This document shows positions 17,515 through 47,466 of a stretch of DNA of 47,466 bases, one piece after another. The translations under genes and the position numbers were made by a program. The notes below the pieces were generated by a model. It saw nothing but the letters and a program-made list of their open reading frames with translations, was not told the origin of the DNA and did no database searches. Source of the DNA: Octopus bimaculoides (Eukaryota); the NCBI RefSeq assembly GCF_001194135.2, contig NC_069004.1, forward strand, positions 33,188,021 to 33,235,486, read 5' to 3'. The first letter of the stretch is position 1; every line of letters starts with the position of its first letter.

Positions 17515-17651
17515 AAAATTTCTATTTGTAAATCTCTTAATGAGAGATATTCAGTAACAATACTGTAGAGTAAAGATTATTTACCAATGTTATGTTTGCA
17601 AATAATCTTTACTCTAGAATACTGTTACTGAGATTTACAAATAGAAATTTT
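17515..17651. repeat. AT-rich intronic hairpin
   Basis: 22-bp perfect outer IR plus 32-bp inner IR with 3 mismatches; 17-nt loop. Confidence 0.85.
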
Positions 17652-17785
17652 CTACTTCTCCCTTGTTTGAAAATGTAAGTACACAGGTACTTACATTTGT
17701 GTTGTATAGCCAGCTGGAGACGATGCTTCCTGGGGCTAAATAACAATAATATTCTACTACCATGTTATTTTGGCAAATAATCCTT

Positions 17786-18605: not shown

Positions 18606-18777
18606 GTGCCATCTATGAGCCTCCATTAACCAATGTCTTCACAATGCAATGGTTTCTGACTCTGTTTGCAACTTGTCTTCCAAAGAAAACCGTTCTCCGA
18701 TTGTGGGATTCTATATTACTGGAAGGTTCTGAGATATTACTACGAGCGGCATTGGTAATCTGGAACAAACTGTCCAA
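18606..18777 (+). CDS. TBC1D30: TBC1D30 exon
   Basis: tgtcag| ... AA|gtaagc; AIYEPPLTNVFTMQWFLTLFATCLPKKTVLRLWDSILLEGSEILLR. Confidence 0.95.
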
Positions 18778-19563
18778 GTAAGCATACATGATTTCCATCT
18801 GATAATTCTCACATCTCTGTCTGTTAGGTTATTGGGGATTTAGTGGCCATGGACTCCGGTTCAATCCTAAGGTGCTGCATCATAACTGTCTTTTGTTATA
18901 GCCTGGGCTGTGTGTTGCAAACGATGGCTTTGTATTGTCTGCAAGCCATACTTGGTAACTGGACTTACCTGGCAAAAATGAGTAATCCTGCAATGGACCA
19001 ATGCCCCATTTGGGTGGGGGAGATATAAACACCAGGGAAGCTGGCCCTTATGAGTCAACATGACTCGAAAAGGTAACTTTACATTTTATCTTTAGTCAGC
19101 TGTAAATGGATAACCTGTGATGGGATTCCCTTCCAACCAGGGGAGAATGTTGGCTTGCATGCTTATCCAGCGAGGCAGCATCATTTGGAAACAAAAAACA
19201 ATGTGAAGCGCATTGTGACACAAACAGGATTCAATAAAGGAGACTCTATTTGGTCACTCAGTTTGCTAGAAATAGTAACCTCATCTCTCTTTCAGCTGTC
19301 CTAAAAAAACAGGAGGGACATGTTGGATAAACAAGTCTTAAATTGTCTAGAACAAAACGGGGATGGTCACTTCTAGAATACCTTTAATTTTTTGTCTGTT
19401 GTATATATATATGTGTGTCTATCATCATCATCATCATCATCGTTTAACGCCCGCTTTCCATGCTAGCATGGGTTGGAAGAATAAAATTCATGTTCAGTTA
19501 AATGAAGGAAAGAAAATGGAGATTTCAGATAAAAATAATTATTTATTATTAAAGAACTGGTAA

Positions 19564-19666
19564 TCTTTACTTCTTACGGCTGTTTCCATTCGCGTTCAAA
19601 AGGAAAATTACAAATTTATGCTATAAATTTGTATTTATGTTAACAGAATTTCATCAGAGAAAAAGA
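19564..19666 (-). ncRNA. Second minimal hammerhead ribozyme motif
   Basis: tctttttct-CUGAUGA-stem II-GAAAC-AGCC-GUA-agaagtaaaga. Confidence 0.5.
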
Positions 19667-19821
19667 TATACATTACGGTATTACATTCTGACCTTTCCGT
19701 TCATTCTAAATATATTACCTATTGATTTAAAGAAATTTTATTTCTCTGAAATATTAGGTATAGAACCAGTTTTTCCTTGAATGTAACCATCCCTTTATGA
19801 GGTTAACATGTCCTTCTAAGC

Positions 19822-19856
19822 CAGTGCTTCTCAAACAATCTGATGTGGCCTACCAG

Positions 19857-19895
<39 letters not shown>

Positions 19896-20135
19896 CCAAT
19901 TTGCCAGGGACCAGTAATATTTCTTAGTAATATAAATTTATACTGGAAGCAATATATATAATGAATATAATAAAAGTTGACAATTTTTTTTTTATCCTAT
20001 ATCTATTTTGTAAACAAATAATATTACATAAGCATTTTATAATGTTTCTTTCTTTTCTGGAAACTCACCACGTACCAGAAGCTGATAGCTCATGGACCAG
20101 CACCAGTCCATGGACCACCAGTTTGAGTAGCACTG
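19822..20135. mobile_element. hAT (Charlie-like) MITE
   Basis: TIRs cagtgcttctcaaac / gtttgagtagcactg (14 of 15 match); 8-bp flanks ttctaagc / ctcgaagc (6 of 8 match). Confidence 0.8.
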
Positions 20136-20324
20136 CTCGAAGCAATTTTAATAATTGTGTGTGTGTGTGTGTGTGTGTACACTGATATACATGCATTGCA
20201 TACAGTATGTATAAAATGGAGAGAAATGAGTTTCTCCTTATTGCTGTAGAATGTTCTTCTCATGTCCCAAGCTTTGTCGCTTTCTCTTATGTATCCTGAC
20301 ATGTCTGTCTGTCTGTCACCACAG

Positions 20325-20430
20325 GAGAATATTAATGGTTGGCAGCGCTGATGAGTTCTATACTCTCATGGGTGAACTGACCCAAGAAATGGTCAGTGGG
20401 GACAAGTTCAGTCCAGAAAAGTTAATAAAG
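20325..20430 (+). CDS. TBC1D30: TBC1D30 exon
   Basis: ccacag| ... AAG|gtaaat; RILMVGSADEFYTLMGELTQEMVSGDKFSPEKLIK. Confidence 0.92.
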
Positions 20431-20599
20431 GTAAATAACATCAATTCCATATTATTTTTATGTATATTTTAAGTCAGACGTGTGTTGTGTGCATGCATGT
20501 ATATATATTCATTACAAAAACTGCTTCTGTTGCTAATAGCTAAAAATAAATAACAATTAAGTTCTAACTCACCCCCCACTGACCTCCTCTCCGTTTCAG

Positions 20600-20837
20600 G
20601 CAATCTACTCAATATCACCATTCCCATTTCCACAACTGAGTGAGTTACGGGAGAAATACACTTACAACATTCGCCCATTCAGTGGGACTGCTAACAGTGG
20701 TAAGAAAGTGAACCAGTTTGATGGTGGTGGTGTGTCCATCAGTGACGATGACCTCGACGAAGAAGACATGGAAGCCATTCGCTGTTTCACTGGCCTCTTC
20801 AACCTCCAATCTCTGAACTCGGCAAACAAGGCAAAAG
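20600..20837 (+). CDS. TBC1D30: TBC1D30 exon (acidic patch)
   Basis: tttcag| ... G|gtttgt; AIYSISPFPFPQLSELREKYTYNIRPF...SDDDLDEEDMEAIRCFTGLF. An internal in-phase donor lies at 20700. Confidence 0.88.
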
Positions 20838-21085
20838 GTTTGTTTTTCACTTCGTTTATTTCTATTGAGAAGAAACTTGCCGTTGATGACAAAAGTTCTT
20901 GTGTGTGACTTAGAGGTGGGGGGGGAGAGCAAACTTCAGACGTCAGGATATCTTCTCGGGCCTCAGCCTCACCTTTCACAGAATCTCTCTTGTCACTATC
21001 ATCCTTGCTTCTCACTCTGTAGAGAAGGCAGTGAGCAAGCAGAGCCATGGGGTTGTGAAGTCCCTTTAGCCATGTTGAGGACATA

Positions 21086-21460
21086 CGCTCTTTTACTTGT
21101 TTCAGTCATTTGACTGCGGCCATGCTGGAGCACCGCCTTTAGTTGAGTAAATCGACCCCCAGGACTTATTCTTTGTAAGCCTAGTACTTATTCTATCAGT
21201 CTCTTTTACCGAACTGCTAGGTTACAGGGATATAAACACACCAGCATCGGTTGTCAAGCGATGTTGGGGGGGACAAACACACAGACATACATACATACGA
21301 CAGGCTTCTTTCAGTTTCAGTCTACCAAATCCACTCACAAGGCTTTAGTCGGCCCGAGGCTATAGTAGAAGACACTTGCCCAAGGTGCCACGCAGTGGGA
21401 ATGAACCCGGAACTATGTGGTTAGTAAGCGAGCTACTTACCACACAGCCACTCCTGCGCC
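21086..21460 (-). mobile_element. Full-length tRNA-headed SINE, family A (octopus OR-like)
   Basis: Head ggcgcaggagtggctgtgtggtaagtagc...gttccgggttcattccc (A and B boxes); body gtgagtggatttggtagactgaaactgaaagaagcc; tail gactgaaacaagtaaaagag. Confidence 0.85.
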
Positions 21461-22305
21461 TAAGAACATGATGACCTCTCTAGGAATGAGACCATGAAAA
21501 GTGCACCCCAGTACATTCTGTTAAGTGCTATAAGCCATGTCCTTGAAATGACTAAAGGGACCCCATTAGCCCCTTGTCTGCTTGCTTGCCAGCCTCTTTA
21601 CAGATCAAGAAGCATGAGTGATAGTCGAATAACAAAAAGGGAGGATGGTCATGGCTGTACTGGGCAGCCCAAACTCCTTGCTACACAACTGGTTAGAGCA
21701 CCATTTATGTATTCAGAAATGTAGGAGCCCTGTGCAATCTCTTGATCTGCTAGAAGCAGAAGCCAAACTTCCCTCACATCACACTCTGCTAGCTTAAAAA
21801 AGATGGCTTTTTTAGAGAATCTATAGTATTTATTGCCTCTAAATAGATGACTTGGTCATGGTTGGAGTGTCTAGTTGATCTGGCTTCTACAACAAAAACA
21901 AGGAGGTAATTTTGCACTTTTCTTACCATGTGTGATAAGTAGCTTGCTTACCAACCACATGGTTCCGGGTTCAGTCCCACTGCGTGGCACCTTGGGCAAG
22001 TGTCTTCCACCTTGTGAGTGGATTTGGTAGACAGAAACTAAAAGAAGCCTGTCGTATATATGTATATGTGTGTGTTTCTGTATCATAGAACTAGAGTCAG
22101 TTTAGGTGGGTACCAGAAGAGTTAATGGTATGGGGATATATTTCATCCAATTTATGGTTTCTAAATAAAAACTGAATCCTTCAAAGAATCAGAGAAAAAA
22201 TGTGTGAATGGGTGTGTGAGAGAGAAAAAGATTTCTATTGTCAATTTGAAGAACTGAATTTTAACTCTGCCGTTGACAACTAATCTGTTCTGGCAATTAA
22301 AACAG

Positions 22306-22524
22306 GTTTAGAAGGAGACGTAAGCAGCACTGCAAACACCAACTGCAATGATATATCAATGGTAGGACCTGGTATCTACGGAATGCCTTCAGTTACCGAT
22401 TCCAACCTGACAGTGAATCGATCTTCGGCCTACATGGAAAGAATGACAACTGATTTATGTGCCTTGAAGAAACAATACCAAAGGCTGCGCCAAAGACAAG
22501 CTCAAGCCCATATTATTTTGTCAG
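22306..22524 (+). CDS. TBC1D30: TBC1D30 exon
   Basis: aaacag| ... G|gtaaat; ...AYMERMTTDLCALKKQYQRLRQRQAQAHIILS. Confidence 0.92.
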
Positions 22525-23403
22525 GTAAATATCTGTCTGTCTGTCTCTCAGTGTTTTTGTCCTCTTCCTTACTGTCTGTTTTTGTCTACCTGTCTCTGAT
22601 TTACCTCTCTGTCCGGTCAGTGAGTGAGAACACGTGGTCTAATGATTAGGGTGTTGCACTTGTGATCGTGAGATTGTGGGTTCAATCCCTGGATTGGCTG
22701 GTACATTGCATTCTTGAGCAAATCACATCCTTTCCCATGGCTCTGCAATCACTTTGACATCTGACATGTGGCACACCATGCATCTGCACAGGCAATATTG
22801 ATTTGATCCACTGTAAACAAATCGTCTTTGCAGATTGTTCAGCAAAAAATTGCAGAACCTGCAGCTGTCATTCATGACAGGAGAGTCTGCTAGCATGGAA
22901 GGCAGACTTTAAAAACGATGACGATGATGATATATGTTGTGAAAACCTAGAGGTGTGGATTTTGAGTCCCACTCATATGGAAAACCCTACTTTTTTTTCT
23001 GTCAAGGGGTTTATATGCTCCAATATTAGACTATTTTCCTTAGTCAATGCACGGTGATCACTTATAAGCTTTAAGCTTATAAATTTTATATATATATATA
23101 ATTTTCAAACATATGAACCTGTATTTTAACTTCTTTTATCGTTGTTACATGCACACACACACACACACACACAGAGCTCTGAAGAAGCTATAATTTGTTA
23201 ATCAGGAACTCAACGATGAGTCCACTGCATCTCAGCAGAAACAAATATAAGCTAATGAAGGTCATAATTGTTTATTCCTTTGTCATCTCATTTTCTTTAT
23301 ATATATATATATACATACATNNNNNNNNNNTATATATATATATATATATACGCAGACAAACACACAGACACGTACATCTCCTCCTTTTCTTCTTGTCTTC
23401 CAG

Positions 23404-25010
23404 CTGCCAATACTTACCAACAGAAGTCACACACAGATTTCATCACGCCTACAATTGAGTCGCCAAAAGCTATGAACCATTTATTTATTGGACGAAATGC
23501 TCTGAAAAAACACAAAAATAGATTCATAACTGCAGGGCCTCGTATCGCTTGTCAAGTTCCTTCGGGCAGTGTTCCAGGGAAAGCTGCCAGCCTTTCAGGT
23601 AAATTCCGTTCAAAGAGCTTCGATAGCCATTTTGATCCAAACCAAAGTTGCAAACCAACCGAAACTCAGAAAATGAATTGCTCAAGAAGATCCAACTCTG
23701 AAAACACCCGTCTCCCCGATGCACTGCAGCGATTGCAATCTGCTGACAATCATAAACTTTCAAGTAGTTCCCAAGATAGTCTTCCCCAAGACGACAACAG
23801 TGGTGGCGGCACAAGTACCAGGGTCACTACAGCTGTTGTGGGCTTGGCATCTAATATGACGTCCTTAAAGGACGACCCAACTGTCGTTGAAGACACTGAT
23901 GCTGGGGATAGTTCCCCTGCAGATTCTATAACAGCTTCTCAAGAGAAGTCACAGGCTACCAGTGTTGAAAACATTACACACACGGCAGATATTTTCATAA
24001 AAGACAGTCAAGAGAACCTTAATCTCACAGACCCTCATTCTGTAAGTGAATTACTACATTCCATATCTGAGATCTCTGCAAATAATTCTGAAGATCCAGC
24101 CCCCACTCAGAACATTACCGATTTAAAAACCCCAACAACTGATCCAGCATGTATTCCTAACGTTCCTCCTGAAACTATGGATCCTGGGCCAACCATCACA
24201 TCTGCCTCTTGTCACGTTGCTAATGGCAACGAAGACAATGATCATAATCAACATTCTTTAATCACCTTTGACAATGGTCCTGAGCATCTTGAAGATGCCT
24301 CATTTGTGGTTACACCTATTTCTCACCTGGAAGATTCTGATGCAAAAGACAATCTAGAGGAACAGGTGAGCCAGTTACTTCGAAGCCCTTCACTCGATAG
24401 CTGTAACAATCTGGACTTTTCAGCACTGTCCGAGGCCTCTGATGAGGTGAGCAGTTTGGCCAGCTTCTTTGAAACGAATAGCGAAAATTTCAAAGTGTCA
24501 GGTGATGACGAAAAGACACCATTATCGTTGTCGCCAATGCCATCAGAGTTATCTTGGGAAACTGTTCCGAATCCTCCCCCTTCCAAAGAACGCTTTCGTT
24601 CTCATTCGTGCTGTTCTCCTGATACGCTTTCACCGACTGAGAAAATTGGTATCAAGTTTGGTGTGGCTCGAATCAACGGAGACTCGTGGTGTCATCAGAA
24701 CATGATGGAATATAACCGTAGCATGCGGCGACGGTCAACAAAGAGCGAATGCCAACTTCCAAGCAATAATTACTCAACTAATTCCAACTCGTTAGAATCC
24801 CTCAACAGCTTCACAACAGAAAGCAAATTTTCTAGTCGTAATGTCAACCCCAAAACTGTAGCCCAGCAATCTGCAGCCGACCCTTCAGTTTATCTCAACC
24901 GACACTGTGCTCTCAATGGTCTCAAATTAGGAATGTACAAACCTTCAATGTTAGTTCGTGTGAATAAAAAACAAAAGCCAAGTTTACAGCGCACTTTCAG
25001 TAAGAGCTGA
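23404..25010 (+). CDS. TBC1D30: TBC1D30 terminal exon (long Ser/Thr/Asp-rich tail)
   Basis: cttccag| phase-1 acceptor; 1607 nt open to TGA at 25008-25010; contains MNHLFIG and C-terminal KLGMY...SLQRTFSKS. Confidence 0.9.
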
Positions 25011-27517: not shown

Positions 27518-29588
27518 TTAATAACAGGGTGATGGGTGGGCAGAATCATAAGTGATGGTACCTGTGCTTATATTTTGGTATTTTTCTTCTTTTTTCTTGA
27601 GGAGGCAAGCTGACATAATTATTAGAGCTTTGTGGTATTTCTTACAATCCTGCTGAGGTTAATTTCATCTTTTATCTTTCTACAGTTCATTATTTAAAAA
27701 AAAGAAACCCTCATCATGTACTGGCACCAACTGACCCCTTGCCCCTCAACATCGCAGCCTTTGTGCCAAAATTTGAAACCATTATTATTATTAAGCAGCA
27801 AGCTGGCAGAATTGTGAGCACATCAGGCAAAGGGCTTAGCGGCATTTTTCTCCATCCTTACATTCTTGGTTCAAATTCCACTGAAGCCAACTTTGCCTTT
27901 CATCTTTTCAGGGTCAATAAAATAAGTACCAGCTGAGCACTAGGGTCAATGTTTATGTCATTGTAGCCTAGCAGTTCAGCAAAAGTGACTGATAAAACAA
28001 GTACTGAACTTGAAAAATAGGCACTGGGGTCAATTTGCTTGCTTAATCCCTTCAATGCAGTGCCACAGAATGGTTACAGTCCAGCAATTGAAAAAATATA
28101 TATATACGTACACATACATAAATATAGGTGTGGGAATGCCTGCAATCAATGCTGTGTTATGGCTATAAATGGTGACATTTCCAGTCAACAAATGGTCCGT
28201 TAGATTTGCCATTCTTGTATAAAAATAAGTAAATATTTTTTTCCATCATTAAAAGTCTTTAATCTTTGACATGACATCAGATCAGTCACATTCATTCACT
28301 TCTCTTTCAATCGAACAAACTTCTCTTTCCTGTTATTCTATCAGGTAACTAACATTGTAAATATCTTTCCATTTGTAAATTAATTCCTTTTGAAGCTCCA
28401 TCTGGTGGTGGTTGTTGTTGCTGCTTATTGTCAGATCAGCTGTGAGTAGAAAACCTTAAAATCTAAGTTGTTCCGTATGTGACCATCCTGTCTTTTCATT
28501 TTCCAGGCATAATGCATCTAGAACTACATAGTCTAACTTGGCCATTTTTCTTTTTTTGAAAACTTTGTGGATAGGACAGGCCTCATTCCCACCCCAGAGA
28601 GATTGAAAATTTTATGAGGACAAGAACGAGGGGTGGGGGAGCAGTAGAGGGTGGGACAACAGCTGCATCTATAAAGGATCTTTAGTCTTTGTGACCCCTT
28701 TAAATATTGTGATATTCTGAGATGTGTTACGGGTTTTATAAATAGGGATATATCTCCCTTGCCGTACATTGTTAGCAGTGAATGACAGGGTCTGTGGAAA
28801 GATCCAAGCAGGGCTCTCCTGGAATGCATGGGGAGGATTCTCTGTGAGGTTGCCCATGCTACAACATTGCAGTATCCCTTCTGCAGAAAATATTCTTTTC
28901 TACTCTAGGCACAAAACCCGAAATTTAAGGGAGGTTCCAGTCGATTAGATCGACCCCAGTATGCAACTGGTACTTAATTTATTGACCCTGAAAGGATGAA
29001 GGGCAAAGTCAACTTCGGCAGAATTTGAACTCAGAACGTAATGACAGACAATATTACTTGGACAGTAGTCTAGCTGGTCATTACTCACTGATGTGAATCT
29101 ACTAACAACCGAGAAGAGATTCCAAATATTTAAAAAAAAAAACAAAATGAAATATTTTCATAAATGGCTTTTAACAGCAAAAATAACATTAATGATAAAT
29201 AAAATGTAAACAAAATCAAATACATACCCCTCTGCTGTTGTAAATCCCTTTCTTCAGNNNNNNNNNNNNNNNNNNNNNNNNNNNNNNNNNNNNNNNNNNN
29301 NNNNNNNNNNNNNNNNNNNNNNNNNNNNNNNNNNNNNNNNNNNNNNNNNNNNNNNNNNNNNNNNNNNNNNNNNNNNNNNNNNNNNNNNNNNNNNNNNNNN
29401 NNNNNNNNNNNNNNNNNNNNNNNNNNNNNNNNNNNNNNNNNNNNNNNNNNNNNNNNNNNTACTTTGTCATCATAAGATAAGTTGACCTCAGAATTTAAAG
29501 CTGGAAAAAATGTTGCTGTGCATTTTGTGCTAACGATTCTGCCAATATATTATAAACAATATACAAAAGTATATTGAAAGGCAAATAG

Positions 29589-31087: not shown

Positions 31088-31241
31088 TTATTTGAAGTCA
31101 AACTGAATCTTGACGAGATATTTCATTTTCACTTGCCTCGTGTCATAAACAACATATTCATTGTAATTTAAGGTATAACCGGCTGGATTAACAACACCAG
31201 TGTCTGAACCAGCGCCATTTGGTATAATCATACCATCTTTC
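31088..31241 (-). CDS. PARP2: PARP2-like terminal exon, catalytic Glu
   Basis: ttacag| ; KDGMIIPNG...YTLNYNEYVVYDTRQVKMKYLVKIQFDFK, TAA at 31090-31088. Confidence 0.95.
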
Positions 31242-31364: not shown

Positions 31365-31589
31365 GTGTGGCCGTTGCCAGTACCGCCTGACTGGCCCTCG
31401 TGCCAGTGGCACGTAAAAGCACCCACTACACTCTCGGAGTGGTTGGCGTTAGGAAGGGCATCCAGCTGTAGAAACTCTGCCAGATCAGATTGGAGCCTGG
31501 TGTAGCCATCTGGTTTGCCAGTCCTCAGTCAAATCGTCCAACCCATGCTAGCATGGAAAGCGGACGTTAAACGATGATGATGATGATGA
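31365..31589 (+). mobile_element. Well-preserved family C copy (RTE 3' UTR-derived, GAT tail)
   Basis: gtggccgttgccagt...ggagtggttggcgttaggaagggcatccagctgtagaaac...ggaaagcggacgttaaacgatgatgat. Other copies near 7905-8106(+), 13166-13375(-), 14440-14540(+), 16258-16440(-), 17358-17487(-), 33650-33830(-), 40693-40828(-), 45268-45450(-), 45825-46090(+), 46720-46910(+), 47085-47450(+). Confidence 0.85.
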
Positions 31590-31966: not shown

Positions 31967-32091
31967 AATGTTTGGTAACTGCTGGGGTGAGGGGCCACAC
32001 GACCAAGTCCCTTGACACTGTTTTTGCCTGGAGGTAGTCTGTCCGCATAATAGTTGGCTTCCAACAGCTCATGAATCTCACCAAGTGACAC
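31967..32091 (-). CDS. PARP2: PARP2-like exon
   Basis: gaccag| ... TT|gtaagt; VSLGEIHELLEANYYADRLPPGKNSVKGLGRVAP. Confidence 0.94.
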
Positions 32092-32698: not shown

Positions 32699-32797
32699 CT
32701 CACAAAGAAGTGCCAGACCAATATTTCTTTTCTTTGTTGCAAAACAGTAATTGGCACTCTTGCTGGACATATCAGCAAAATATATTCCTTTACCAAA
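32699..32797 (-). CDS. PARP2: PARP2-like exon, catalytic Tyr
   Basis: ccacag| ... GAG|gtaaga; [33 protein letters not shown]. Confidence 0.96.
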
Positions 32798-33326: not shown

Positions 33327-33426
33327 CATATCACCAGTGACAGGGGCTTCCGGTGGTGCTATACGTAGTCCACGACTGAGAATACCAACCCAGTTGGTTA
33401 GACGGGATCCATGCCATAACAACATC
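33327..33426 (-). CDS. PARP2: PARP2-like exon, catalytic His and D-loop
   Basis: ttctag| ... ATG|gtcagt; [33 protein letters not shown]. Confidence 0.95.
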
Positions 33427-34286: not shown

Positions 34287-34411
34287 CTGTTCCCATAATC
34301 AACAAACTGGTTGTGTTCAGCCATTTTCGTGCAGCTGTACACTTCCATGAGCTGCATTCTATAACTGTTGTGGGTGACAGCATGAGTGTTTTGGAGGTAG
34401 TTGCTCACAAG
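34287..34411 (-). CDS. PARP2: PARP2-like exon, catalytic domain
   Basis: ttcccag| ... AG|gtaaga; LVSNYLQNTHAVTHNSYRMQLMEVY...DYGN. Confidence 0.93.
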
Positions 34412-34586: not shown

Positions 34587-34718
34587 CTTGAAATCTGGAT
34601 GATCTGAAGAGACGAGTGTGAGCTCGCATTCCAGGGATTTGTAAGTCTTGTCGATGGGGTTTTCTGACATGTCCCCTTGTTTCAAGATATTGATGGCAAT
34701 CTCTATATCCCCTAAGGC
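34587..34718 (-). CDS. PARP2: PARP2-like exon
   Basis: ttcccag| ... AAG|gtaaga; ALGDIEIAINILKQGDMSENPIDKTYKSLECEL. Confidence 0.93.
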
Positions 34719-36198: not shown

Positions 36199-36262
36199 CT
36201 CGAGTAACTGGATCTTTTCTTTGACTGTCTGCTCATCACGGATTACAGGGGGTTTTCTCATG
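36199..36262 (-). CDS. PARP2: PARP2-like exon, helical regulatory domain
   Basis: gtccag| ... GAG|gtagga; MRKPPVIRDEQTVKEKIQLLE. Confidence 0.92.
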
Positions 36263-36682: not shown

Positions 36683-36821
36683 CCAAAAGTGTGTGGAATT
36701 CTTGTGTAAAATTCATCGCATGCTGAAGACAAGCTAGCACCAAAGTTCTTCTTTTCTATACAGGCAGCAATTTTTTTCAAAGCTTGGTAACCAGCTTGGA
36801 TCTGTTTCACCGTTAAACGAC
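36683..36821 (-). CDS. PARP2: PARP2-like exon, helical regulatory domain
   Basis: ttgctag| ... GG|gtaggt; RLTVKQIQAGYQALKKI...ACDEFYTRIPHTF. Confidence 0.93.
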
Positions 36822-37263
36822 CTAGCAAAGTTTAATTAAACAGATTAATTGTAAAGCTTCAAATTCAAAGCAGGGTTTTTGTTTACTAATTATTCTTTCA
36901 CATTGTTGTATCACAGACAGTTTTATCTTCTAGGTAAATGGTTCTCAACTGGGGTCAATATAAAATTTTAGGGGGTCCACACCAGCAAAATAGTAAATTG
37001 GGTAAACACAGAAGTATGTTAAGGGTTCATGAAAATATTTTGTTTTAGATGTNNNNNNNNNNNNNNNNNNNNNNNNNNNNNNNNNNNNNNNNNNNNNNNN
37101 NNNNNNNNNNNNNNNNNNNNNNNNNNNNNNCCTGGCTTTAAGGATATTGCAAAAAGCATGGTTGGAGGCCCAACCTTCTGAGTTATTTTAAAGGGCTTAA
37201 AAAAACTGAAGGACCACTGCAGTAGGTGTGTGAATCTGAGAGGGGAATAGGTTGAATCTTGTG

Positions 37264-37913: not shown

Positions 37914-37998
37914 CCAGTGGAGCTTTCTGTGCATCATATTTCATCTCAATGACCGTTTCTTTCATCGAATCAATGTCAGATATTAACTTTATCAATTT
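37914..37998 (-). CDS. PARP2: PARP2-like exon, helical regulatory domain
   Basis: ttgcag| ... G|gtaagt; KLIKLISDIDSMKETVIEMKYDAQKAPL. Confidence 0.93.
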
Positions 37999-38203: not shown

Positions 38204-38287
38204 TTGCAGAGAGGGGTCAAGTTTGGAGTCAGGAACTTTGCAGACACTTTCTTTTTTCGTATTATTCCCATCAACATCATCTTTTCC
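38204..38287 (-). CDS. PARP2: PARP2-like exon, linker
   Basis: tgttag| ... CAA|gtaagt; GKDDVDGNNTKKESVCKVPDSKLDPSLQ. Confidence 0.88.
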
Positions 38288-38773: not shown

Positions 38774-38870
38774 CTGAGTACTGTAATCCATTTGAATCAG
38801 ATCATATTTTCCTGAGACTTGTTTAAATTTGTGTCGTTCACTCCAATCGTTTTTTGTCTTATCGTGAAAT
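38774..38870 (-). CDS. PARP2: PARP2-like exon, WGR end
   Basis: ctttcag| ... CAG|gtatat; FHDKTKNDWSERHKFKQVSGKYDLIQMDYSTQ. Confidence 0.93.
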
Positions 38871-39628: not shown

Positions 39629-39801
39629 TTTTTGGTGAACACATCGATGGCATTGTTTAAGTCTAAGGCACAGTCTATAAGATTGGTCTGGCCCTTGTAT
39701 CCAACGCGGCCCCATCGCAGCCACACGTAGTAGTGACGACTGTTGTCTTGTTGCAGAAGTTGGATCAAATAGAACTTGTTGTTGTTGTTGAGTGCATTGG
39801 T
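39629..39801 (-). CDS. PARP2: PARP2-like exon, WGR core
   Basis: ctgtag| ... AA|gtaagt; TNALNNNNKFYLIQLL...YYVWLRWGRVGYKGQ. Confidence 0.95.
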
Positions 39802-39994: not shown

Positions 39995-40107
39995 CTGGTT
40001 AAGCATACAGTCCCAGACATCATTTCCTTGGGTATAAACATGGACACGACCCAATAAAGGACACTCATCGTCTACTGACGCCATTCCTCTGACCACCACT
40101 GTCTTGA
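39995..40107 (-). CDS. PARP2: PARP2-like exon, WGR domain start
   Basis: ttccag| ... CAG|gtaggg; KTVVVRGMASVDDECPLLGRVHVYTQGNDVWDCMLNQ. Confidence 0.92.
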
Positions 40108-41568
40108 CTGGAATATAAATTAACCGTTTTATTACGAGCAATCTAAGAAATCATTTGTAAGAAACCAGAAGAATAGTAACAGAGAATTACACAAAACGTA
40201 TGACATTGCAGTAAATATTGTAACCCTTTAGTATATTCAGATTATTCTATTAAATGTAATCTTTATTTATTCCCATTGTTTTAAATTAAGCAAGCATTAT
40301 GTTGCAACTTCAAGATTTCAATGATGTGAGTGTATATTTTTTTCAATGACATTGTAGGGTAAGTGTAAGAGGCCAGATGTTGACAGTTCCAACATAAAAC
40401 AGCAAAGCATTTTGTCCCACACACTCATGATTCTGCCAGCTCATCACAATAATAATAATAATAATAATAATGATAAAAATGGTTTCAAATTTTCACACAA
40501 GGCCAGCAGTTTTTGGGGGAGGACTTAAGTCGATTAAATCAGCCCCAGTGTTCAACTGGTACTTATATCAACCCCAAAAGGATGAAAGGCAAAGTTGACT
40601 CCAGTGGAATTTGAACTCAGAACATAAAGATGGACGAAATGCCACTAAGCCTTTTGCACAGCATGCTAACGAGTCTGCCAGATTGCCACCTTAATCATCA
40701 TCATCATCATCATCATCGTTTAACGTCCGCTTTCCATGCTAGCATGGGTTGGACGATTTGACTGATGAAACCGGATGGCAACACCAGGCTCCAGTCTGAT
40801 TTGGCAGAGTTTCTACACCTGGATGCCCTAATAATAATAATCTTTTCTACTATAGGCACAAGGCCTGAAATTTTGGTGGAGGCAGGATAAGTCGATTTCA
40901 TCAACCCCAAAAGGATGAAAGGTAAAATCGACTTTGGCAGAATTTGAACTCAGAATGNNNNNNNNNNNNNNNNNNNNNNNNNNNNNNNNNNNNNNNNNNN
41001 NNNNNNNNNNNNNNNNNNNNNNNNNNNNNNNNNNNNNNNNNNNNNNNNNNNNNNNNNNNNNNNNNNNNNNNNNNNNNNNNNNNNNNNNNNNNNNNNNNNN
41101 NNNNNNNNNNNNNNNNNNNNNNNNNNNNNNNNNNNNNNNNNNNNNNNNNNNNNNNNNNGCTTGACGAGCACTTGTTTTATTGACCTCGAAAGGACGAAAA
41201 GCAAAATCGACCTCAGCAGAATTCGAGCTTAAAATGCAAAAACAAACGAAATGCCACTCGTGTCCCAGTTGATCCAATCAACGGAACAGCCTGCTTGTGA
41301 AATTGATGTAGTCTGCAGGATGATTCAGCAGGACATAAAATATGAAACGGTTGGCACTTCTGAGTTACAGGTACATCTCATTTTTCCCAGCTGGGTGGAC
41401 TGCAGCAACATGAAATAAAGTGTCTTGCTCAAGGACACAACACGCTGCCAGGAATTGAACTCACGATCTTATGATCCTGAGCCGAACACCCTAACCACTG
41501 AGCCATGTGCAAAAAAGTAATGACGTAAGTAATCTGGAGCTAAAGAGTTTAGAAGGGAGACTACTTAC

Positions 41569-41790
41569 TTTTCTTCTTGTCTTCATTGCTGTGACCATTC
41601 TCTTCAGGACATTCCTTCTTCACTTTGTCCGCAGACTGAGTACAGGGTTTACCACTTTTCTTGCGGTTCGTCGTCGCCTGCGACTGTGTTGCATTCGTCT
41701 TACGACCATTCCGACTGCTGGCGCTACTACTAGTACTGCTATTACAAGAGTTATCTACCGTGTCGTCTGAAGTCGATGACGAAGCTCCAC
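41569..41790 (-). CDS. PARP2: PARP2-like exon, Ser/Lys-rich linker
   Basis: ttccacag| ... A|gtaagt; phase 1-1; GASSSTSDD...TNRKKSGK...NEDKKK. Confidence 0.8.
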
Positions 41791-42827
41791 CTGTGGAATG
41801 GAAGAGACAGACGTATTCTTTCACTGGTTTCCATTAGCAAACTGGGACCATGCCAGGGACCTCCAGCAAGTGTGTGTCATACAGAAGGAGTTATTAATAA
41901 GGGATTATCAATCTGGACAAAACACTTCAGAAGCTCCTAATACAAATACACCAGGCTAACAAAAAAGACACCTTTCAACTCTATGCTTTCTAAACTCATT
42001 TGTTAAACACTTTACAGTTTATGCTGGGTGCACCCACACCAGAGAGGTTGTGTTGCTCACTAGTCACTGGTGATTAATCATTTGAGGTACTTACTTAAGG
42101 ACTTTTCAATCCTATCATTGCTTTTTCCTGAGTCCTGGAAGATCTGAGTTTTATTTCTTCTTTGTTTTTGATTCATTTTCTAGTGAGGGGGAGACAGGAC
42201 TTGAACTTGGAGCATGCAAATCTTTAAGATTCCATGGGGCATCTCATCTAATGCAAAAGAGTGGTTGGCTTTAGGAAAAGTATCTAGCTATAGAGACCCT
42301 GTCAAAGTGGACACTGGAGTTCAATGAAATTTTTGGACCATCAGATCCTGTTAAATCTTGGAGTGTATTTAATGATCCCAGAAGAATAAAAGGATAAGGC
42401 CAGCCATGGCTAGATTTGAACCAGGAATGCAAGAAACTGAAATAACCCAAGGCACTCTACCCAATGAAAAGAAAAGGGGGGGGGAGTAGTTACAGCTGGA
42501 ATACTCTTCATCATGAGTCTGCTGGATCAAGATATACATCAACATCTGTTTACTGCAACATTATAAAAGGTTTTGACTATTCCCTTGTCCTGTGTATCAC
42601 ATCTGATGACCCACCAGACATATTTCCCCGGTGTCCATGCATGATACATGATACACATCCCCAATTTCTTTCAACCCCCAGAATATTTGGGGATTTCTGA
42701 AAAGAAAGTTTTATAAAATGCCCAGAACATGAAACAAGGAATAACTAAAAGTCTGAAACAAACATGGATGCTTAGGACAAATTTGTAAAAATTACTTTGG
42801 ACAGGCAAATGGTTTAAGTTGACATAC

Positions 42828-43034
42828 TTTTAATTCTTTGCACTGACGAGATGACATTGTCCACTTCGTTTGACTGCTTCAGCGTCTGAAGGTCAATTAG
42901 GAATGATTGATTACTTGTTACAATGTCTACTGTTGGCACCGACTTCCTGAAAGCCTTCTCCAATGCCAGACTGGATGGGATACAGTATGTTTGCCATGTT
43001 CCATTCTTAGCCTGCCACTGCCAAGAGTAGTATT
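42828..43034 (-). CDS. PARP2: PARP2-like exon, WWE domain 2
   Basis: ttcaag| ... A|gtatgt; YYSWQWQAKNGTWQTYCIPSSLALEKAF...FLIDLQTLKQSN...VQRIK. Confidence 0.85.
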
Positions 43035-43103
43035 CTTGAAAGTAAAGAAACAAAATATCAAAACATGTAAATAACAGAAATAAGAAAGAAAAAAAAAGTT
43101 TAA

Positions 43104-43586
43104 CCCATTTGGTGCCATCTTGCTTGAGACTAACCTTGGTTTTACAATAAATTAAATCTTTCCATTAAAATTTCATGTTAATTTTACGTTCTAAATTCCA
43201 GCTTAATAACGACAAAGTTATTTTACTAATTTCTTTATTATTTTCAAAATTAAGTAAAACAAAGGCAATGAATTTCAATAGATATTTGGTAACAAAAAGA
43301 ATTAAAGTGATCGAAATTAAACTTCCTTCAAGACTTCATGTTACAAACTCCAGCTTTTCCTAAATTCTTCAAAATTGCAACTGAAGCAATGTATTTCAAC
43401 AGAAACATGTTAAAAAAAAGAGCTAAAGTGATCTAAATTAAAACCTTCCATAGAAATTACATGTTAATTTATGTTCCAAACACCATCTTAATAAATGACA
43501 AAGTTATTTTACTAAATTCCTCATTATTTTCAAAATTAATTTAAACAAAGACAGGGTATTTCAACAGAAATACGATGTCAAAAGGA
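43104..43586. mobile_element. TTAA-flanked AT-rich element with internally iterated end motif (piggyBac-like MITE array)
   Basis: TTAA at 43100-43103 and 43587-43590; unit aagttattttactaa...atttcaacagaaa repeated; reverse-strand relatives at about 17160-17345 and 18140-18550. Confidence 0.65.
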
Positions 43587-44344
43587 TTAAGATGTTTGTG
43601 TTTGTGTAACTACAACACGAGACCAGATACATGTGCAGTGCTGTAGATTGTACATCAGTTTTGAAGAACATCAGCAGCTAATCAGATCTTCGATTCTTCA
43701 AGAAAAAGTCTAGTTTTTGGAGAACAAGTTTGATAATGTTATATTTGTGTGAGGCTTATATCAATGCAAAGTTGCTATGAAGGATCATCAGGGACATATC
43801 TGTAACTCCACCTTACACATACGGTGGGGCTTGATCGGTGTCTATATAAAGGGAGTTTCTGTGTTTGAAGATATGAGCAGAGTATTATACCACTATGTTT
43901 AATGTACATGCGATGTGAGTGTATCTTTATTTTTTCCTTGCTTCAGTCATCAGCCTGTAGCCATGCTGGAGCATTGCCTTGACCGATTTAGGGAAACTAA
44001 TCGGCCCTGGTGCTTTTTCTATCAGTTTCTTTTGCTGAACTGCTAAGTTACAGGAACGTAAACAAACCATCAATGGTTGTCAAGCAATAGTGGTGAATAA
44101 ACAGAGAGAGAGATACAAGGGGCTTCTTTCAGTTTCTGCTTACCAAATCCACTCACAAAGCTTTGGTCAGCGTAAGGCTACAGTAAAAGACACTTGACAA
44201 AAGTGCCACACAGTGGGACTGAACCTGGAACCAAATGTCTTGCCAAACAGTCATGCTAAGAGGCACACACACACACACAAATAGGATAAGAGAGTCTAAG
44301 AAAATACAAAATGTATTGGTTTGAGGTTAAGGTTATAAACTGAC

Positions 44345-44471
44345 CTTTATCTTTTTCATCCTGGAAACAACAGCGAATCCGTCCCTGACGGACTGGTTTG
44401 TTTGCTGTCTTCTGAATGAGATGGTCTAATGATATCAGCAGCTTTCGTCCTGAGTTATCTGTGACTTCAAC
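44345..44471 (-). CDS. PARP2: PARP2-like exon, end of WWE domain 1
   Basis: caacag| ... G|gtcagt; VEVTDNSGRKLLISLDHLIQKTANKPVRQGRIRCCFQDEKDK. Confidence 0.78.
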
Positions 44472-44852
44472 CTGTTGTTGTTGTTGATGAAAACATTTAA
44501 AAATAAAAAAAATTTTATTATCAATTGTTGTTACCACCACCACCACCACCACCCCATACTTAACTACCCACCCAAACAATACTATCATCATCATGACCAC
44601 ACCCATTACTGTTTTTTTTTTTTTTATCTGACATCATCAGCATCATCGTTTAACGTCTGCTTTCCATGCTGGTATGGGTTGGATGGTTTGACTGGGGACT
44701 GGCAAGCACGGAAAAGTGGACATTAAAGTGATGATGGATGGATAGTTAGATAGATAGATAGACAGACAGACAGATAGAGAGAACACTTGATGAAAGACCT
44801 GCTGAGAGTCAACATGGAAGTAACAAAAACATAAAAAAGCAAACAAGCTTAC

Positions 44853-45040
44853 TTCGGTGTCACCACCATTATAGCGGTCAGTCAACTGTTCAGAAATACT
44901 GTCAGAATGAGGCAACCATTTGCCAGAATCTTCATAATCCCACCTTACTGTGAATCCATCAATCTCAGGTAACATATCCACGGGAATGGATATTGTTTTC
45001 GCTCGTTTAAACGAAGTTCCATTGCTGTTACTGGAATTTG
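44853..45040 (-). CDS. PARP2: PARP2-like exon, start of WWE domain 1
   Basis: ttattcag| ... GAA|gtaagc; NSSNSNGTSFKRAKTISIPVDMLPEIDGFTVRWDYEDSGKWLPHSDSISEQLTDRYNGGDTE. First in-exon in-frame ATG at 44975. Confidence 0.8.
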
Positions 45041-46127
45041 CTGAATAAAAGAAGCAAAAAAGAAACATTTTTTGGGTGGAGTGGAACCAAATACAAAGAA
45101 ATCATTCCTCATACCTATTCTTGACCAAAATCACTGACACTGGAGAACATTATGGCAGCTACTTTATTCCAAGAATGTCAGAGGAATGGACTCCAGTCTG
45201 CCCATGTAAACCAGCTTGGAGGGGATGGTAAATATGGTGACAGCATCGAGGTATCATCCTTATCATTTAACATCCATTTTCCATGCGGGCATGGGTTGGA
45301 CGGTTTGACAACGTCCAATGAGTCACAGAGGTACATCAGGCCCTGATGTCCGCCTTGGCATGGTTTCTACACTTGGATGCACTTCCTAATGCTGACCACT
45401 CTACAGAATGTACTGGGTACTTTTTTTTTTTTGTGACACTGGCACCAGAGAGGTCACCAAAGAACTTGCAAGGCAAAGTAAAGAAAAGGAAAAGTTTGCT
45501 TTGATTGAGTGGAAAGTGTATTTGAGGGAAGGTGGAGGGTGGGGTAAATAAAAGACATTTTACAGATTCTGATGATGAGAGTATTTCTGCCCAATCTACA
45601 GAATCTCTCAGAAACGGAGCTAAAAAGACTCCTGAGAATCAAAGAGAGAACCAACCAATTACTTCAACTCTAGATGGAAACATTTACACAAAAATAGAAT
45701 GAAGTGGCAAGAATTTCCAAGTGTTCTGAAGCCAGGCCACAGAATTGTGTATTGGGATTCTTCATCATCAGGTACCAACCATTCTCGGCATTTTGAATAT
45801 CGTGGATCGCCACATATAAGAAGCATTGGTGGTGGTGCCACATGAAAAGGACCGGTGCTGGTGCCACGTAAAAAGCACTGGTGCCACATAAAGAGCATTG
45901 GTACTGGTACCACATAAAAAGTGCTGGTGCTATGAAAAAAAAACACCCAGTACACTGTTTGAAGTGGGTGGTGTTAGGAAGGGCATCCAGCCATAGAAAC
46001 CATGCCAAATCAGGCAATCGATGTGGGCCCCTGTCAAGCCGTCCAACCCATGCCAGCATGGAAAATGGATATCAAATGATGATTACGATGACCCTTGGTC
46101 CTACTCATGTTCTCCTTGTCCACTCAC

Positions 46128-46164: not shown

Positions 46165-47466
46165 GGCTCAGACAAGAGTTTTTCTAGGGCCAGATATCCT
46201 TCCGATCATCAATCCCCAATTGTTTCCAAGTAAGTCAATCCTCTCCCAATTTACTGAACAACAAACAGCTCAGATAAGTTTACACAGAGAACAGGAAACA
46301 AACAACACGACACAAACAGGTCTTTTATTTACACAAGTTGCACAACATGTCAGGACATGTCGATATACCTGCACGGTCAATAGACAAAACAACGCCATTG
46401 TTTACATACACGACACAAGGAAGTACAAGGCTCACTCACACAATCTTTCAGTCATTTGACTATGACCATGCTGGAGCACTGCCTTTGAAGGGTTTCAGCC
46501 AAACTTTTTTAAAACCTGATACGTTTTCTATTATTCTCTTTTCCTGAACTGCTAAGTTATGGGTAGGGCAAACACAAAAACCCTTATCTCTCTCTCTCTA
46601 TTATTCTTTTAACTTCTCATCAACTGGCTCAAAGCCACCTCCCTCAATACTACCTCCACTCCACCTCTGGTCAAGGGGAATTTCTTTTTCGTATCTTACA
46701 AATTACTTGGTGACCCCTACTGGTGTTGGTACCACGATAGAAGCACCCAGCACACTTAGTAAAGTAGTTGGCGTTAGAAAGAGGTATCTAACCATCGAAA
46801 TCATGTCAAAACAGACAATGGGGCTTGACACAGCCCTCTGGCTTGCCAGCTCTTGTCAAACTCATCCAACCCATGCCAGCATAGAAAACGGACATTAAAT
46901 AATTATGGTGATGACTGTGGTAAGAAGCTTGCTTCCCAACCACATGGTTCTGGGTTCAATTCCGCTGTGTGGTACCTTGGGCAAGTGTCTTCTGCTATAG
47001 CCTCAGGCCGACCAAAGCCTTGCGAGTGGATTTGGTAGGCGGAAACTGAAAGAAGCCCATCATGTGTGTGTATGTACATATATATAGCTTTGGATGCGGA
47101 ATCTCACTGAGGAAATGAGAAGGGGCCGAGAGTTGCAGCGATCTGCTGTACTTGAGAAAAAACACACCAAGCCAAGTAGAATCACTGCCGTCCTATAAAT
47201 ACGGCTTGTCTTTCACAGGTACTGGTACCACTTAAAAATGTACTCATACTGGCATTGCACAAATGCACCCATGCCAGTGGCGCATAAAAGGCACCCAGCA
47301 CACTCAGTAAATTGATTGGCGTTAAAAAGGGCATCCAGACATAGAAACCATGCCACAACAGACAACTGGTATCTGGGTATCTGGTCAGCTCTTGTCATCA
47401 AACTGTCCAATCCTTGCCAGCAGAGAAAAAGGATGTTACACGATGATGATAAACTGTATTCACTTT

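What the first reader, a model, noticed from the sequence alone, without database searches (positions are those of the whole stretch)
42828..45040. PARP2-type enzyme with a tandem WWE module in place of the basic N-terminal region
Seen: three phase-compatible exons encode two WWE-like repeats (RWDYEDSGKWLPH...LTDRY and SWQWQAKNGTWQTY...LEKAF...LIDLQTLKQ...VQR). They splice in frame through a Ser/Lys linker into a PARP2-type WGR-helical-catalytic core with H-Y-E intact. Established: mammalian PARP2 has no WWE; WWE domains bind ADP-ribose in RNF146, Deltex and PARP11-14. Inference: a DNA-break-activated writer that could also read PAR, giving feed-forward recruitment. WWE1 lacks the signature Glu and both repeats differ from RNF146 at several ligand-contacting positions, so binding may be altered. 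I recall WWE-bearing clade-1 PARPs in some non-mammalian animals, so this may be an under-studied ancestral form rather than unique.
Basis: partly seen in the sequence, partly recalled or inferred. Interest (0 to 1): 0.7.

Follow-up and report, generated by a model that had tools for sequence, protein, structure and literature searches.

The report
Octopus PARP2 with ancestral WWE pair
These exons encode two WWE domains at the front of the octopus PARP2 DNA-repair enzyme; the arrangement is real, but it is already annotated, already published, and shared by most animals except placental mammals.

Summary
On the minus strand, three GT-AG exons (45040-44853, 44471-44345, 43034-42828) encode two Pfam WWE domains. 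They splice in frame, through a basic Ser/Lys linker, into a WGR, helical and catalytic core with H-Y-E intact. My 17-exon model equals residues 8-750 of RefSeq XP_014776883.1, "PARP2 isoform X1", Octopus bimaculoides. Exon 1 lies 2.7 kb beyond the window.

The architecture is not new. 108 of the 120 best homologues carry WWE+WGR+PARP_reg+PARP. They span sponges, cnidarians, molluscs, annelids, echinoderms, lamprey, fish, amphibians, squamates and marsupials. Among named hits, only bats, one amphioxus model and one tubeworm model lack WWE. Perina et al. 2014 already reported WWE domains on non-mammalian PARP2.

The WWE pair is added to the basic region, not substituted for it: the bat N-terminal region aligns to the post-WWE linker.

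Most likely function (inferred): a poly(ADP-ribose) reader that recruits or retains a break-activated writer. Human PARP2's disordered N-terminus is already reported to do this.

Octopod peculiarities:
- The phosphate-contacting Arg (RNF146 R163 equivalent) is replaced in both repeats.
- The D-loop Tyr is Asp.
- WWE2 nevertheless evolves as slowly as the catalytic core.

Verdict: real, ordinary, already known, functionally under-studied.

The parts
44853..45040 (-). PARP2 coding exon 2 (residues 7-69 of XP_014776883.1): basic N-terminal tail and the first half of WWE1. Met29 here is the start of isoform X2.
   Evidence: AG/GT borders; enters in phase 1. Pfam WWE repeat 1 spans residues 39-102. 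Isoform X2 is the 722-aa form starting MLPEID.
44345..44471 (-). Coding exon 3 (residues 70-112): second half of WWE1, including the adenine-binding Gln equivalent (LIQKT).
   Evidence: Exons 2+3 total 315 nt, a symmetric phase 1-1 unit.
42828..43034 (-). Coding exon 4 (residues 112-181): the whole of WWE2 (Pfam residues 114-178).
   Evidence: 207 nt, symmetric phase 1-1. Pfam WWE 45.8 bits alone. The AlphaFold2 model of residues 30-186 has pLDDT 95.1.
41569..41790 (-). Coding exon 5 (residues 181-255): Ser/Lys-rich basic linker. It is the counterpart of the placental PARP2 N-terminal region.
   Evidence: 16 Ser and 11 Lys in 75 residues, pI 9.3. Bat residues 2-60 align to the marsupial post-WWE linker, residues 181-236.
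39995..40107 (-). Coding exon 6 (residues 255-292): the conserved segment just before the WGR domain (KTVVVRG...VDDEC...MLNQ).
39629..39801 (-). Coding exon 7: WGR domain core (WLRWGRVG).
   Evidence: Pfam WGR 87.8 bits.
38774..38870 (-). Coding exon 8: end of the WGR domain.
38204..38287 (-). Coding exon 9 (84 nt): WGR-to-helical-domain linker. I missed it in my first assembly.
   Evidence: It is needed for the exact match to the RefSeq protein.
37914..37998 (-). Coding exon 10: start of the helical (PARP_reg) domain.
36683..36821 (-). Coding exon 11: helical domain.
36199..36262 (-). Coding exon 12: helical domain.
34587..34718 (-). Coding exon 13: end of the helical domain.
34287..34411 (-). 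Coding exon 14: start of the catalytic (ART) domain.
33327..33426 (-). Coding exon 15: catalytic His (LLWHGSR) and D-loop. The D-loop reads PVTGDM, with Asp where PARP1 has Tyr889 and PARP2 has Tyr455.
32699..32797 (-). Coding exon 16: catalytic Tyr (GIYFADM).
31967..32091 (-). Coding exon 17: catalytic domain.
31088..31241 (-). Coding exon 18: catalytic Glu (YNEYVVY) and the TAA stop codon.

Best explanation
The finding covers coding exons 2-4 of the Octopus bimaculoides PARP2 orthologue, which lies on the minus strand. The window holds 17 of its 18 coding exons.

Domain order of the protein:
- a short basic tail;
- WWE1 (exons 2+3);
- WWE2 (exon 4);
- a basic Ser/Lys linker;
- WGR;
- the helical regulatory domain;
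- the ADP-ribosyltransferase domain with H-Y-E.

This is the ancestral animal form of PARP2. Placental mammals lost the WWE cassette and kept only the flanking basic segments as their 'N-terminal region'.

Mechanism. Shown: the domains, the fold, and conservation under purifying selection. Inferred:
1. WGR senses DNA breaks and relieves autoinhibition by the helical domain, as in human PARP2.
2. The compact WWE pair reads the ADP-ribose/iso-ADP-ribose units of poly(ADP-ribose) already laid down, mainly by PARP1.
3. That reading recruits or retains the enzyme at PARylated sites. It possibly also helps to activate it. This is the role reported for the disordered N-terminal region of human PARP2.

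In octopods the pocket is remodelled: the Arg equivalent to RNF146 R163 is replaced in both repeats. Affinity or ligand preference is therefore probably altered.
For: Identity:
- The spliced model is an exact suffix of XP_014776883.1.
- The window is 100% identical to GCA_001194135.2 CM046624.1.
- The core scores PARP2 628 bits, PARP1 404, PARP3 178 against solved structures.

Domains and fold:
- Pfam WWE x2, WGR, PARP_reg, PARP.
- The AlphaFold2 model of residues 30-186 has pLDDT 95.1 and pTM 0.88.
- Foldseek's best matches are the Deltex/DTX1 and ZAP tandem WWEs. Single repeats superpose on TRIP12, HUWE1 and RNF146 at 1-2 A.
- A profile of the PARP2 WWE pair hits DTX1 at 6e-24, TRIP12 at 5e-17 and RNF146 at 4e-7.

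Ancestral state:
- 108 of the 120 best homologues, from sponge to marsupial, carry WWE.
- Pfam re-scan: Sarcophilus 2 WWE, lamprey 2, jellyfish 2, sponge Dysidea 3, bat 0.
- Perina et al. 2014 state the same for bird, frog and fish.

One mRNA:
- A 2,415-nt intron-free Logan contig encodes the 65%-identical P0003 with WWE through PARP in one ORF.
- Argonauta has the same exon layout.
- Both annotated octopus isoforms keep the pair.

Reader function:
- The adenine-binding Gln (RNF146 Q153) is kept in both octopus repeats, and in 92 of 97 WWE1 and 96 of 100 WWE2 sequences.
- WWE2 keeps W, W, E and an aromatic residue at the Y144 position.
- That Gln contacts adenine in all solved WWE-ligand structures, and the tandem DTX1 WWE binds an 11-mer PAR at 340 nM (PMC11269756).
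- The human PARP2 N-terminal region binds PAR and is needed for PAR-dependent activation (PMC6089979).

Constraint: Octopus versus Argonauta dN is WWE2 0.13 and WWE1 0.27, against linker 0.33, WGR 0.10, HD 0.12 and ART 0.15, with synonymous sites saturated. WWE2 is identical in three Octopus species.
Against: - No binding or recruitment data exist for any WWE-bearing PARP2 in the literature I could search.
- The Arg that contacts a phosphate in RNF146 (R163; PMC10877565) is Ser in octopod WWE2. Only the two octopod sequences among the 100 aligned have Ser there. It is Gly in Octopus WWE1.
- WWE1 lacks the signature Glu and the Y144 aromatic residue in the whole PARP2 family.
- The RNF146 K175 equivalent cannot be aligned.
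- The octopus pair scores 64 bits against Pfam WWE, versus 86-162 bits in the other orthologues re-scanned.
- DTX1 and DTX2 bind mononucleotide ligands only at 0.2-0.7 mM.
- The predicted packing of the two repeats differs from Deltex (rmsd about 8.6 A over both repeats).
Confidence: 0.65

Rival explanations
1. In octopods, and perhaps for WWE1 in all animals, the WWE pair no longer binds ADP-ribose. It serves instead as a protein-protein interaction or structural module. The precedent is the Drosophila Deltex tandem WWE, which binds Notch ankyrin repeats (that binding is from my own knowledge, not tested here).
For: - The R163-equivalent Arg is lost in both octopus repeats. WWE1 lacks the Glu and the Y144 aromatic residue family-wide.
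- The octopus pair has a lower Pfam score than the other orthologues.
- The closest solved tandem is Deltex/DTX1.
- WWE2 is strongly conserved despite the Arg loss, so some function is kept.
Against: - The adenine-binding Gln and the stacking aromatic residues are retained in both repeats. Nothing but nucleotide binding is known to require that Gln.
- Arg or Lys residues remain next to the lost position: GRIRC in WWE1, and VQR plus K at about the R110 position in WWE2.
Confidence: 0.3
2. Gene-model artefact: the WWE exons belong to a separate upstream transcript and are only computationally fused to PARP2.
For: No RNA-seq reads from this species were available to me. The RefSeq entry is a predicted (XP_) model.
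Against: - The same architecture occurs in 108 of 120 homologues from many phyla.
- An intron-free 2.4-kb transcript contig carries WWE through PARP in one ORF in the closest non-octopod relative.
- All junctions are GT-AG and in phase.
- The exon layout is conserved in Argonauta.
- No stop or start signal separates the parts.
- There is no other ORF of note on either strand of 42500-45300.
Confidence: 0.02
3. One reading: a lineage-specific innovation in which a WWE pair replaced the basic DNA-binding N-terminus, creating a new writer-reader feed-forward enzyme.
For: Human, mouse and bat PARP2 lack WWE.
Against: - The pair is present from sponges to marsupials and was published in 2014.
- The basic segments are retained on both sides of it.
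- PAR reading by PARP2 is already described in human.
Confidence: 0.02

Closest known systems
PARP2 of non-placental animals (WWE-WWE-WGR-HD-ART), as noted by Perina et al. 2014, DNA Repair 23:4 (PMC4245714)
   Same: Same domain order. Identity to the octopus protein over the whole length is 43-75%. Both share two WWE repeats, a basic linker and H-Y-E. The octopus gene is a plain orthologue, annotated as such in RefSeq.
   Different: Octopods replace the R163-equivalent Arg in WWE2 (Ser), and Octopus also in WWE1 (Gly). They also replace the D-loop Tyr with Asp. The sponge Dysidea has three WWE repeats.
Human/placental PARP2 (disordered basic N-terminal region, then WGR-HD-ART)
   Same: The WGR-HD-ART core scores 628 bits. 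Identity to bat PARP2 is about 60% per core domain. The basic linker before WGR is homologous to the placental N-terminal region. The human N-terminal region binds PAR, which is the function inferred for the WWE pair.
   Different: Placentals have no WWE domains. The 522-nt, phase 1-1 WWE cassette is absent there, and its removal keeps the reading frame.
Deltex / DTX1 tandem WWE (PDB 2A90, 8R5N, 8R6A)
   Same: Best sequence-profile match (6e-24) and best Foldseek match. Both are two WWE repeats joined by a short linker. DTX1 binds PAR, and both of its repeats can bind ADP.
   Different: About 17-18% identity. The predicted relative orientation of the repeats differs (TM 0.43-0.48, rmsd about 8.6 A over both repeats). 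Deltex pairs with a RING/DTC ligase, not with a PARP.
RNF146 WWE (PDB 3V3L), the reference iso-ADP-ribose reader
   Same: Same fold (rmsd 1.2-1.5 A). The equivalents of Q153, the Y107 stacking position and E125 are present in WWE2.
   Different: In octopus, R163 becomes Ser/Gly, W114 and K175 are not conserved, and R110 is only approximately matched by Lys. RNF146 has a single WWE.
WWE-bearing clade-3 PARPs (PARP11, PARP14, ZAP/PARP13 WWE1-WWE2)
   Same: A WWE domain sits N-terminal of a PARP catalytic domain. ZAP also has a packed WWE pair.
   Different: These are a different PARP clade, without WGR or the helical domain. They match the PARP2 WWE profile more weakly (6e-7 to 4e-3, against 6e-24 for DTX1). 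Most are mono-ADP-ribosyltransferases or inactive.

Membership tests
PARP2 (clade 1 DNA-dependent PARP) | WGR domain directly upstream of the helical regulatory domain and the ART domain | tested here: met
   Pfam WGR 87.8 bits, PARP_reg 151.6, PARP 230.1, in that order.
PARP2 (clade 1 DNA-dependent PARP) | H-Y-E catalytic triad | tested here: met
   LWHGSR, GIYFAD and YNEYVVY are present.
PARP2 (clade 1 DNA-dependent PARP) | Closer to PARP2 than to PARP1 or PARP3, with no zinc fingers or BRCT | tested here: met
   Human PARP2 628 bits, PARP1 404, PARP3 178. All named best hits are PARP2. No zinc-finger, PADR1 or BRCT hit in Pfam.
PARP2 (clade 1 DNA-dependent PARP) | DNA-break-stimulated poly(ADP-ribose) synthesis | not testable with these tools
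   Needs an enzyme assay. The D-loop Tyr-to-Asp change makes a direct test worthwhile.
WWE domain (PF02825) | Profile match above the curated threshold | tested here: met
   Repeat 1 scores 28.4 bits and repeat 2 scores 45.8 bits, against a gathering score of 21.1.
WWE domain (PF02825) | Half-beta-barrel plus one helix fold | tested here: met
   AlphaFold2 pLDDT 95.1; each repeat has six strands and one helix. Rmsd is 1-2 A to the TRIP12, HUWE1 and RNF146 WWE domains.
WWE domain (PF02825) | Signature Trp, Trp, Glu | tested here: inconclusive
   WWE2 has W, W and E. WWE1 has W, W and Thr instead of Glu, as in the whole PARP2 family, where the position is T/N/S.
PAR / iso-ADP-ribose-reading WWE (RNF146 type) | Adenine-binding Gln (Q153) and a stacking aromatic residue (Y107) | tested here: met
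   Gln is present in both repeats. The Y107 position is Tyr in WWE1 and Trp in WWE2. The role of the Gln is described in PMC11269756.
PAR / iso-ADP-ribose-reading WWE (RNF146 type) | Phosphate-contacting basic residues (R110, R163, K175) | tested here: not met
   R163 becomes Gly in WWE1 and Ser in WWE2. K175 has no alignable equivalent. R110 is matched only approximately, by Lys in WWE2. Most other PARP2 orthologues keep R163: 83 of 97 in WWE1 and 82 of 100 in WWE2.
PAR / iso-ADP-ribose-reading WWE (RNF146 type) | Measured binding to PAR or iso-ADP-ribose | not testable with these tools
   No data were found for any PARP2 WWE.
Deltex-type tandem WWE | Two WWE repeats packed as one unit with Deltex-like geometry | tested here: inconclusive
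   It is the top Foldseek and profile match, and pTM 0.88 suggests a fixed pair. Superposition over both repeats is poor, however (TM 0.43-0.48, rmsd 8.6-8.7 A).

The most novel reading that the evidence does not exclude
The PAR-dependent recruitment and activation that human PARP2 performs through its disordered N-terminal region is the remnant of an ancestral, WWE-based PAR reader.

Their PARP2 would then read a different ADP-ribose feature, or bind it far more weakly, and could differ in NAD+ or inhibitor handling.
Probability: 0.3. Interest if true: 0.45.

Novelty: already known. Interest (0 to 1): 0.2.

Why it matters
It matters little as a discovery. The gene is annotated as PARP2 in RefSeq, its Pfam domains are precomputed, and the WWE-bearing form of PARP2 was described in 2014.

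It has modest value as a reminder. Nearly all PARP2 biochemistry comes from the placental protein, which is the derived, WWE-less form. Most animals, marsupials included, carry a folded pair of putative ADP-ribose readers on this enzyme, and I found no functional study of it. Testing it would show whether PAR-dependent recruitment and activation of PARP2 is an ancient, domain-encoded property.

Tried and rejected
- **Homologue search with the WWE region alone.** It returned nothing, not even the protein itself. This is a quirk of the word index, not evidence of uniqueness: the full-length query then found 619 hits.
- **Search for the MPRRKQ start exon inside the window.** It is absent. It was found 2.7 kb outside the window in L001. 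Upstream in-window ATG/GT candidates at about 46400, 46146 and 45153 were rejected, because their phase is wrong or they hit an in-frame stop.
- **dN/dS between Octopus and Argonauta.** Synonymous sites are saturated (pS about 0.78), so no ratio can be given. Only dN per domain is reported. 589 of 750 codons were paired, because three short Argonauta exons were not recovered by tblastn.
- **A WWE-less, exon 2-4-skipped isoform.** It would be in frame, but that exact sequence is not in the 15-billion-protein collection. Both annotated isoforms keep the pair.
- **Literature searches for a functional study of PARP2 WWE domains.** Only the 2014 survey mentions them. Citarelli et al. 2010 list WWE for clades 2 and 3 only. 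Wang et al. 2012 (RNF146) is not held in the library, so residue roles were taken from PMC10877565 and PMC11269756. The C-terminal third of the RNF146 sequence used is from my memory. It was checked only against the published residue numbers and the part of 3V3L shown.
- **The Tc1/mariner-like ORF fragments at about 5730-4830.** They gave only sub-threshold HTH and DDE_3 hits.
- **A full-length structure prediction.** Not run, because the tool returns no inter-domain contact information.
Full report
**What is in the sequence**

The window is Octopus bimaculoides genomic DNA. It is 100% identical to GCA_001194135.2 chromosome record CM046624.1.

On the minus strand I assembled 17 exons, every one with AG/GT borders and compatible phases. 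Their translation is an exact suffix, residues 8-750, of the 750-aa RefSeq protein XP_014776883.1, "poly [ADP-ribose] polymerase 2 isoform X1".

The finding's interval holds coding exons 2, 3 and 4: 45040-44853, 44471-44345 and 43034-42828. Exon 2 enters in phase 1, so a start exon is required. It is ATGCCGCGAAGAAAGCAAG|gt (MPRRKQ plus one base) and lies about 2.73 kb beyond the end of the window. A second annotated isoform (X2, 722 aa) starts at Met29 inside exon 2 and keeps both WWE repeats.

The core also contains an 84-nt exon at 38287-38204, which I missed in my own first assembly.

**Is it more than chance?**

Pfam WWE (gathering score 21.1) scores 28.4 bits on repeat 1 alone and 45.8 bits on repeat 2 alone. 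WGR, PARP_reg and PARP score 87.8, 151.6 and 230.1 bits.

An AlphaFold2 model of residues 30-186, built with 38 orthologues, has mean pLDDT 95.1 and pTM 0.88. It shows two units of six strands and one helix.

Foldseek ranks the Deltex and DTX1 tandem WWE structures first, then the ZAP WWE1-WWE2 pair. Single repeats superpose on the TRIP12, HUWE1 and RNF146 WWE domains at 1-2 A. A profile of the PARP2 WWE pair hits DTX1 at 6e-24, TRIP12 at 5e-17, Deltex at 1e-14, HUWE1 at 5e-12 and RNF146 at 4e-7.

The core scores 628 bits to human PARP2, 404 to PARP1 and 178 to PARP3. H-Y-E is intact.

**Is it one transcript?**

I had no RNA-seq for this species, but four lines of evidence argue for a single mRNA:
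- The closest non-octopod relative (P0003, 65% identity) is encoded by one uninterrupted ORF on a 2,415-nt Logan contig, that is, an assembled transcript. The ORF runs from WWE through PARP.
- Argonauta hians has the same exon layout.
- Nothing else of note is encoded on either strand of 42500-45300.
- 108 of the 120 best homologues have the same four-family Pfam string.

**How common is it?**

The WWE-bearing homologues include:
- molluscs of all major classes, a brachiopod, a nemertean and annelids;
- echinoderms, a jellyfish and sponges;
- lampreys, a shark, a teleost, many amphibians and squamates;
- five marsupials.

The 12 hits without WWE are bats, one Branchiostoma model (506 aa), one Ridgeia model (601 aa) and unnamed contigs.

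Re-scanning confirmed two WWE repeats in the Tasmanian devil (111 bits), lamprey (107) and jellyfish (86), three in the sponge Dysidea (162), and none in a bat.

Perina et al. [quoted passage not shown] The earlier survey by Citarelli et al. 2010 listed WWE only for clades 2 and 3. The architecture is therefore ancestral for animals and already known. The only refinement here is that the loss is placental rather than mammalian.

**"In place of the basic N-terminal region" is wrong**

The octopus protein keeps a very basic tail (residues 1-28, pI 11.7). It also keeps a Ser/Lys-rich basic linker after WWE2 (75 residues, 16 Ser, 11 Lys, pI 9.3).

Bat PARP2 residues 2-60, its "N-terminal region", align to Tasmanian devil residues 181-236, which is the linker after WWE2. 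In a 12-species alignment the bat protein has no residues opposite either octopus WWE repeat.

Each repeat is also a symmetric phase 1-1 unit:
- exons 2+3, 315 nt;
- exon 4, 207 nt;
- together 522 nt.

Deleting or skipping the cassette therefore leaves the frame intact. That is a simple route to the placental form, and duplication of such a unit would fit the three-repeat sponge form. No skipped isoform is on record for octopus.

**Likely function**

The steps below are inferred from human PARP2, not shown here:
1. The WGR domain senses DNA breaks.
2. That relieves autoinhibition by the helical domain.
3. The H-Y-E catalytic domain synthesises poly(ADP-ribose).

For the WWE pair, the best-supported role is reading ADP-ribose units of existing PAR. 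The support is:
- The Gln that makes the two hydrogen bonds to adenine in every solved WWE-ligand complex is present in both octopus repeats. It is present in 92 of 97 WWE1 and 96 of 100 WWE2 sequences across the family.
- WWE2 keeps the two Trp residues, the Glu, and an aromatic residue (Phe) at the RNF146 Y144 position.
- The DTX1 tandem WWE binds an 11-mer PAR at 340 nM.
- Human PARP2 binds PAR through its N-terminal region and needs that region for PAR-dependent activation and branching. A PARP2 that both writes and reads is therefore not a new concept.

**Points against canonical binding in octopus**

- The Arg equivalent to RNF146 R163, a phosphate contact, is Ser in WWE2. Only the two octopod sequences among the 100 aligned have Ser there.
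- The same position is Gly in WWE1 of Octopus, although Argonauta keeps Arg.
- WWE1 lacks the signature Glu and the Y144 aromatic residue in the whole PARP2 family.
- The octopus pair scores 64 bits against Pfam WWE, versus 86-162 bits in the four orthologues re-scanned.

Even so, the module is constrained. Octopus versus Argonauta non-synonymous divergence is as follows, with synonymous sites saturated:

| Region | dN |
|---|---|
| WWE2 | 0.13 |
| WWE1 | 0.27 |
| Linker | 0.33 |
| WGR | 0.10 |
| Helical domain | 0.12 |
| Catalytic domain | 0.15 |

WWE2 is identical in O. bimaculoides, O. vulgaris and O. sinensis. I therefore put about 0.55-0.6 on a retained, possibly weakened or retuned, ADP-ribose reader. 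I put about 0.3 on a switch to another partner.

**Verdict**

It is an annotated orthologue with a published, ancestral architecture.

Novelty: already known. Interest is low, at 0.2. The residual interest lies in the absence of any functional work on the WWE pair of PARP2 and in the octopod-specific changes.

Noticed in passing
window 33327-33426 (minus strand), codon GAT in PVTGDM: The D-loop Tyr (PARP1 Tyr889, PARP2 Tyr455) is Asp in O. bimaculoides and Argonauta, against Tyr in the other 118 of the 120 best homologues. It is also Asp in O. vulgaris and O. sinensis. In human PARP2 this Tyr stacks on talazoparib and hydrogen-bonds Glu335 of the helical domain (PMC4157409). The consequence for activity, autoinhibition or inhibitor binding is unknown.
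   Followed up: partly
window about 14989-25007, plus strand (L001 35208-39130): A RabGAP-TBC gene (product 1,296 aa in the annotation) converges tail-to-tail on PARP2. TBC-domain exons lie near 14989-15372, 15857-16141 and 18500-18778 (Pfam RabGAP-TBC, 122.8 bits). A long Ser-rich last exon is open from 23268 to 25007.
   Followed up: partly
window, at least 14 sites, e.g. 4642-4716, 13166-13236, 17352-17424, 31515-31588, 40702-40764, 44632-44707, 45253-45309, 46841-46914: A dispersed repeat core of about 60-75 bp (76-91% identity, both orientations) lies in PARP2 introns and elsewhere in the window. It produces the recurring pseudo-peptide '...F(P/S)CWHGLDGL...' in ORF lists. It looks like a SINE-type interspersed repeat and was not classified.
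   Followed up: partly
window about 4830-5730, minus strand: Three same-frame ORF fragments separated by stops resemble a decayed Tc1/mariner-type transposase. Only sub-threshold Pfam hits were found (HTH_23 20.3 bits, DDE_3 16.6 bits).
   Followed up: partly
window exons 45040-44853 + 44471-44345 (315 nt) and 43034-42828 (207 nt): Each WWE repeat is a symmetric phase 1-1 exon unit. Removing all three exons (522 nt) keeps the reading frame, which fits loss of the cassette in placentals and a third repeat in a sponge orthologue (P0077).
   Followed up: partly
window, several runs of N, e.g. about 7400-7680, 29258-29459, 37053-37130, 40958-41158: There are 785 N bases in assembly gaps, several of them inside PARP2 introns. 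None interrupts a coding exon.
   Followed up: yes
window 44733-44782 and 45809-45930: Intronic tandem repeats: (GATA)n, 12.5 copies, in the intron after coding exon 2, and a 26/46-bp minisatellite upstream of coding exon 2.
   Followed up: no
tool behaviour: The word-indexed protein search returned no hit for the 162-aa WWE segment, although the database holds the identical full-length protein. Negative results from that tool on short or divergent queries should not be read as absence.
   Followed up: yes
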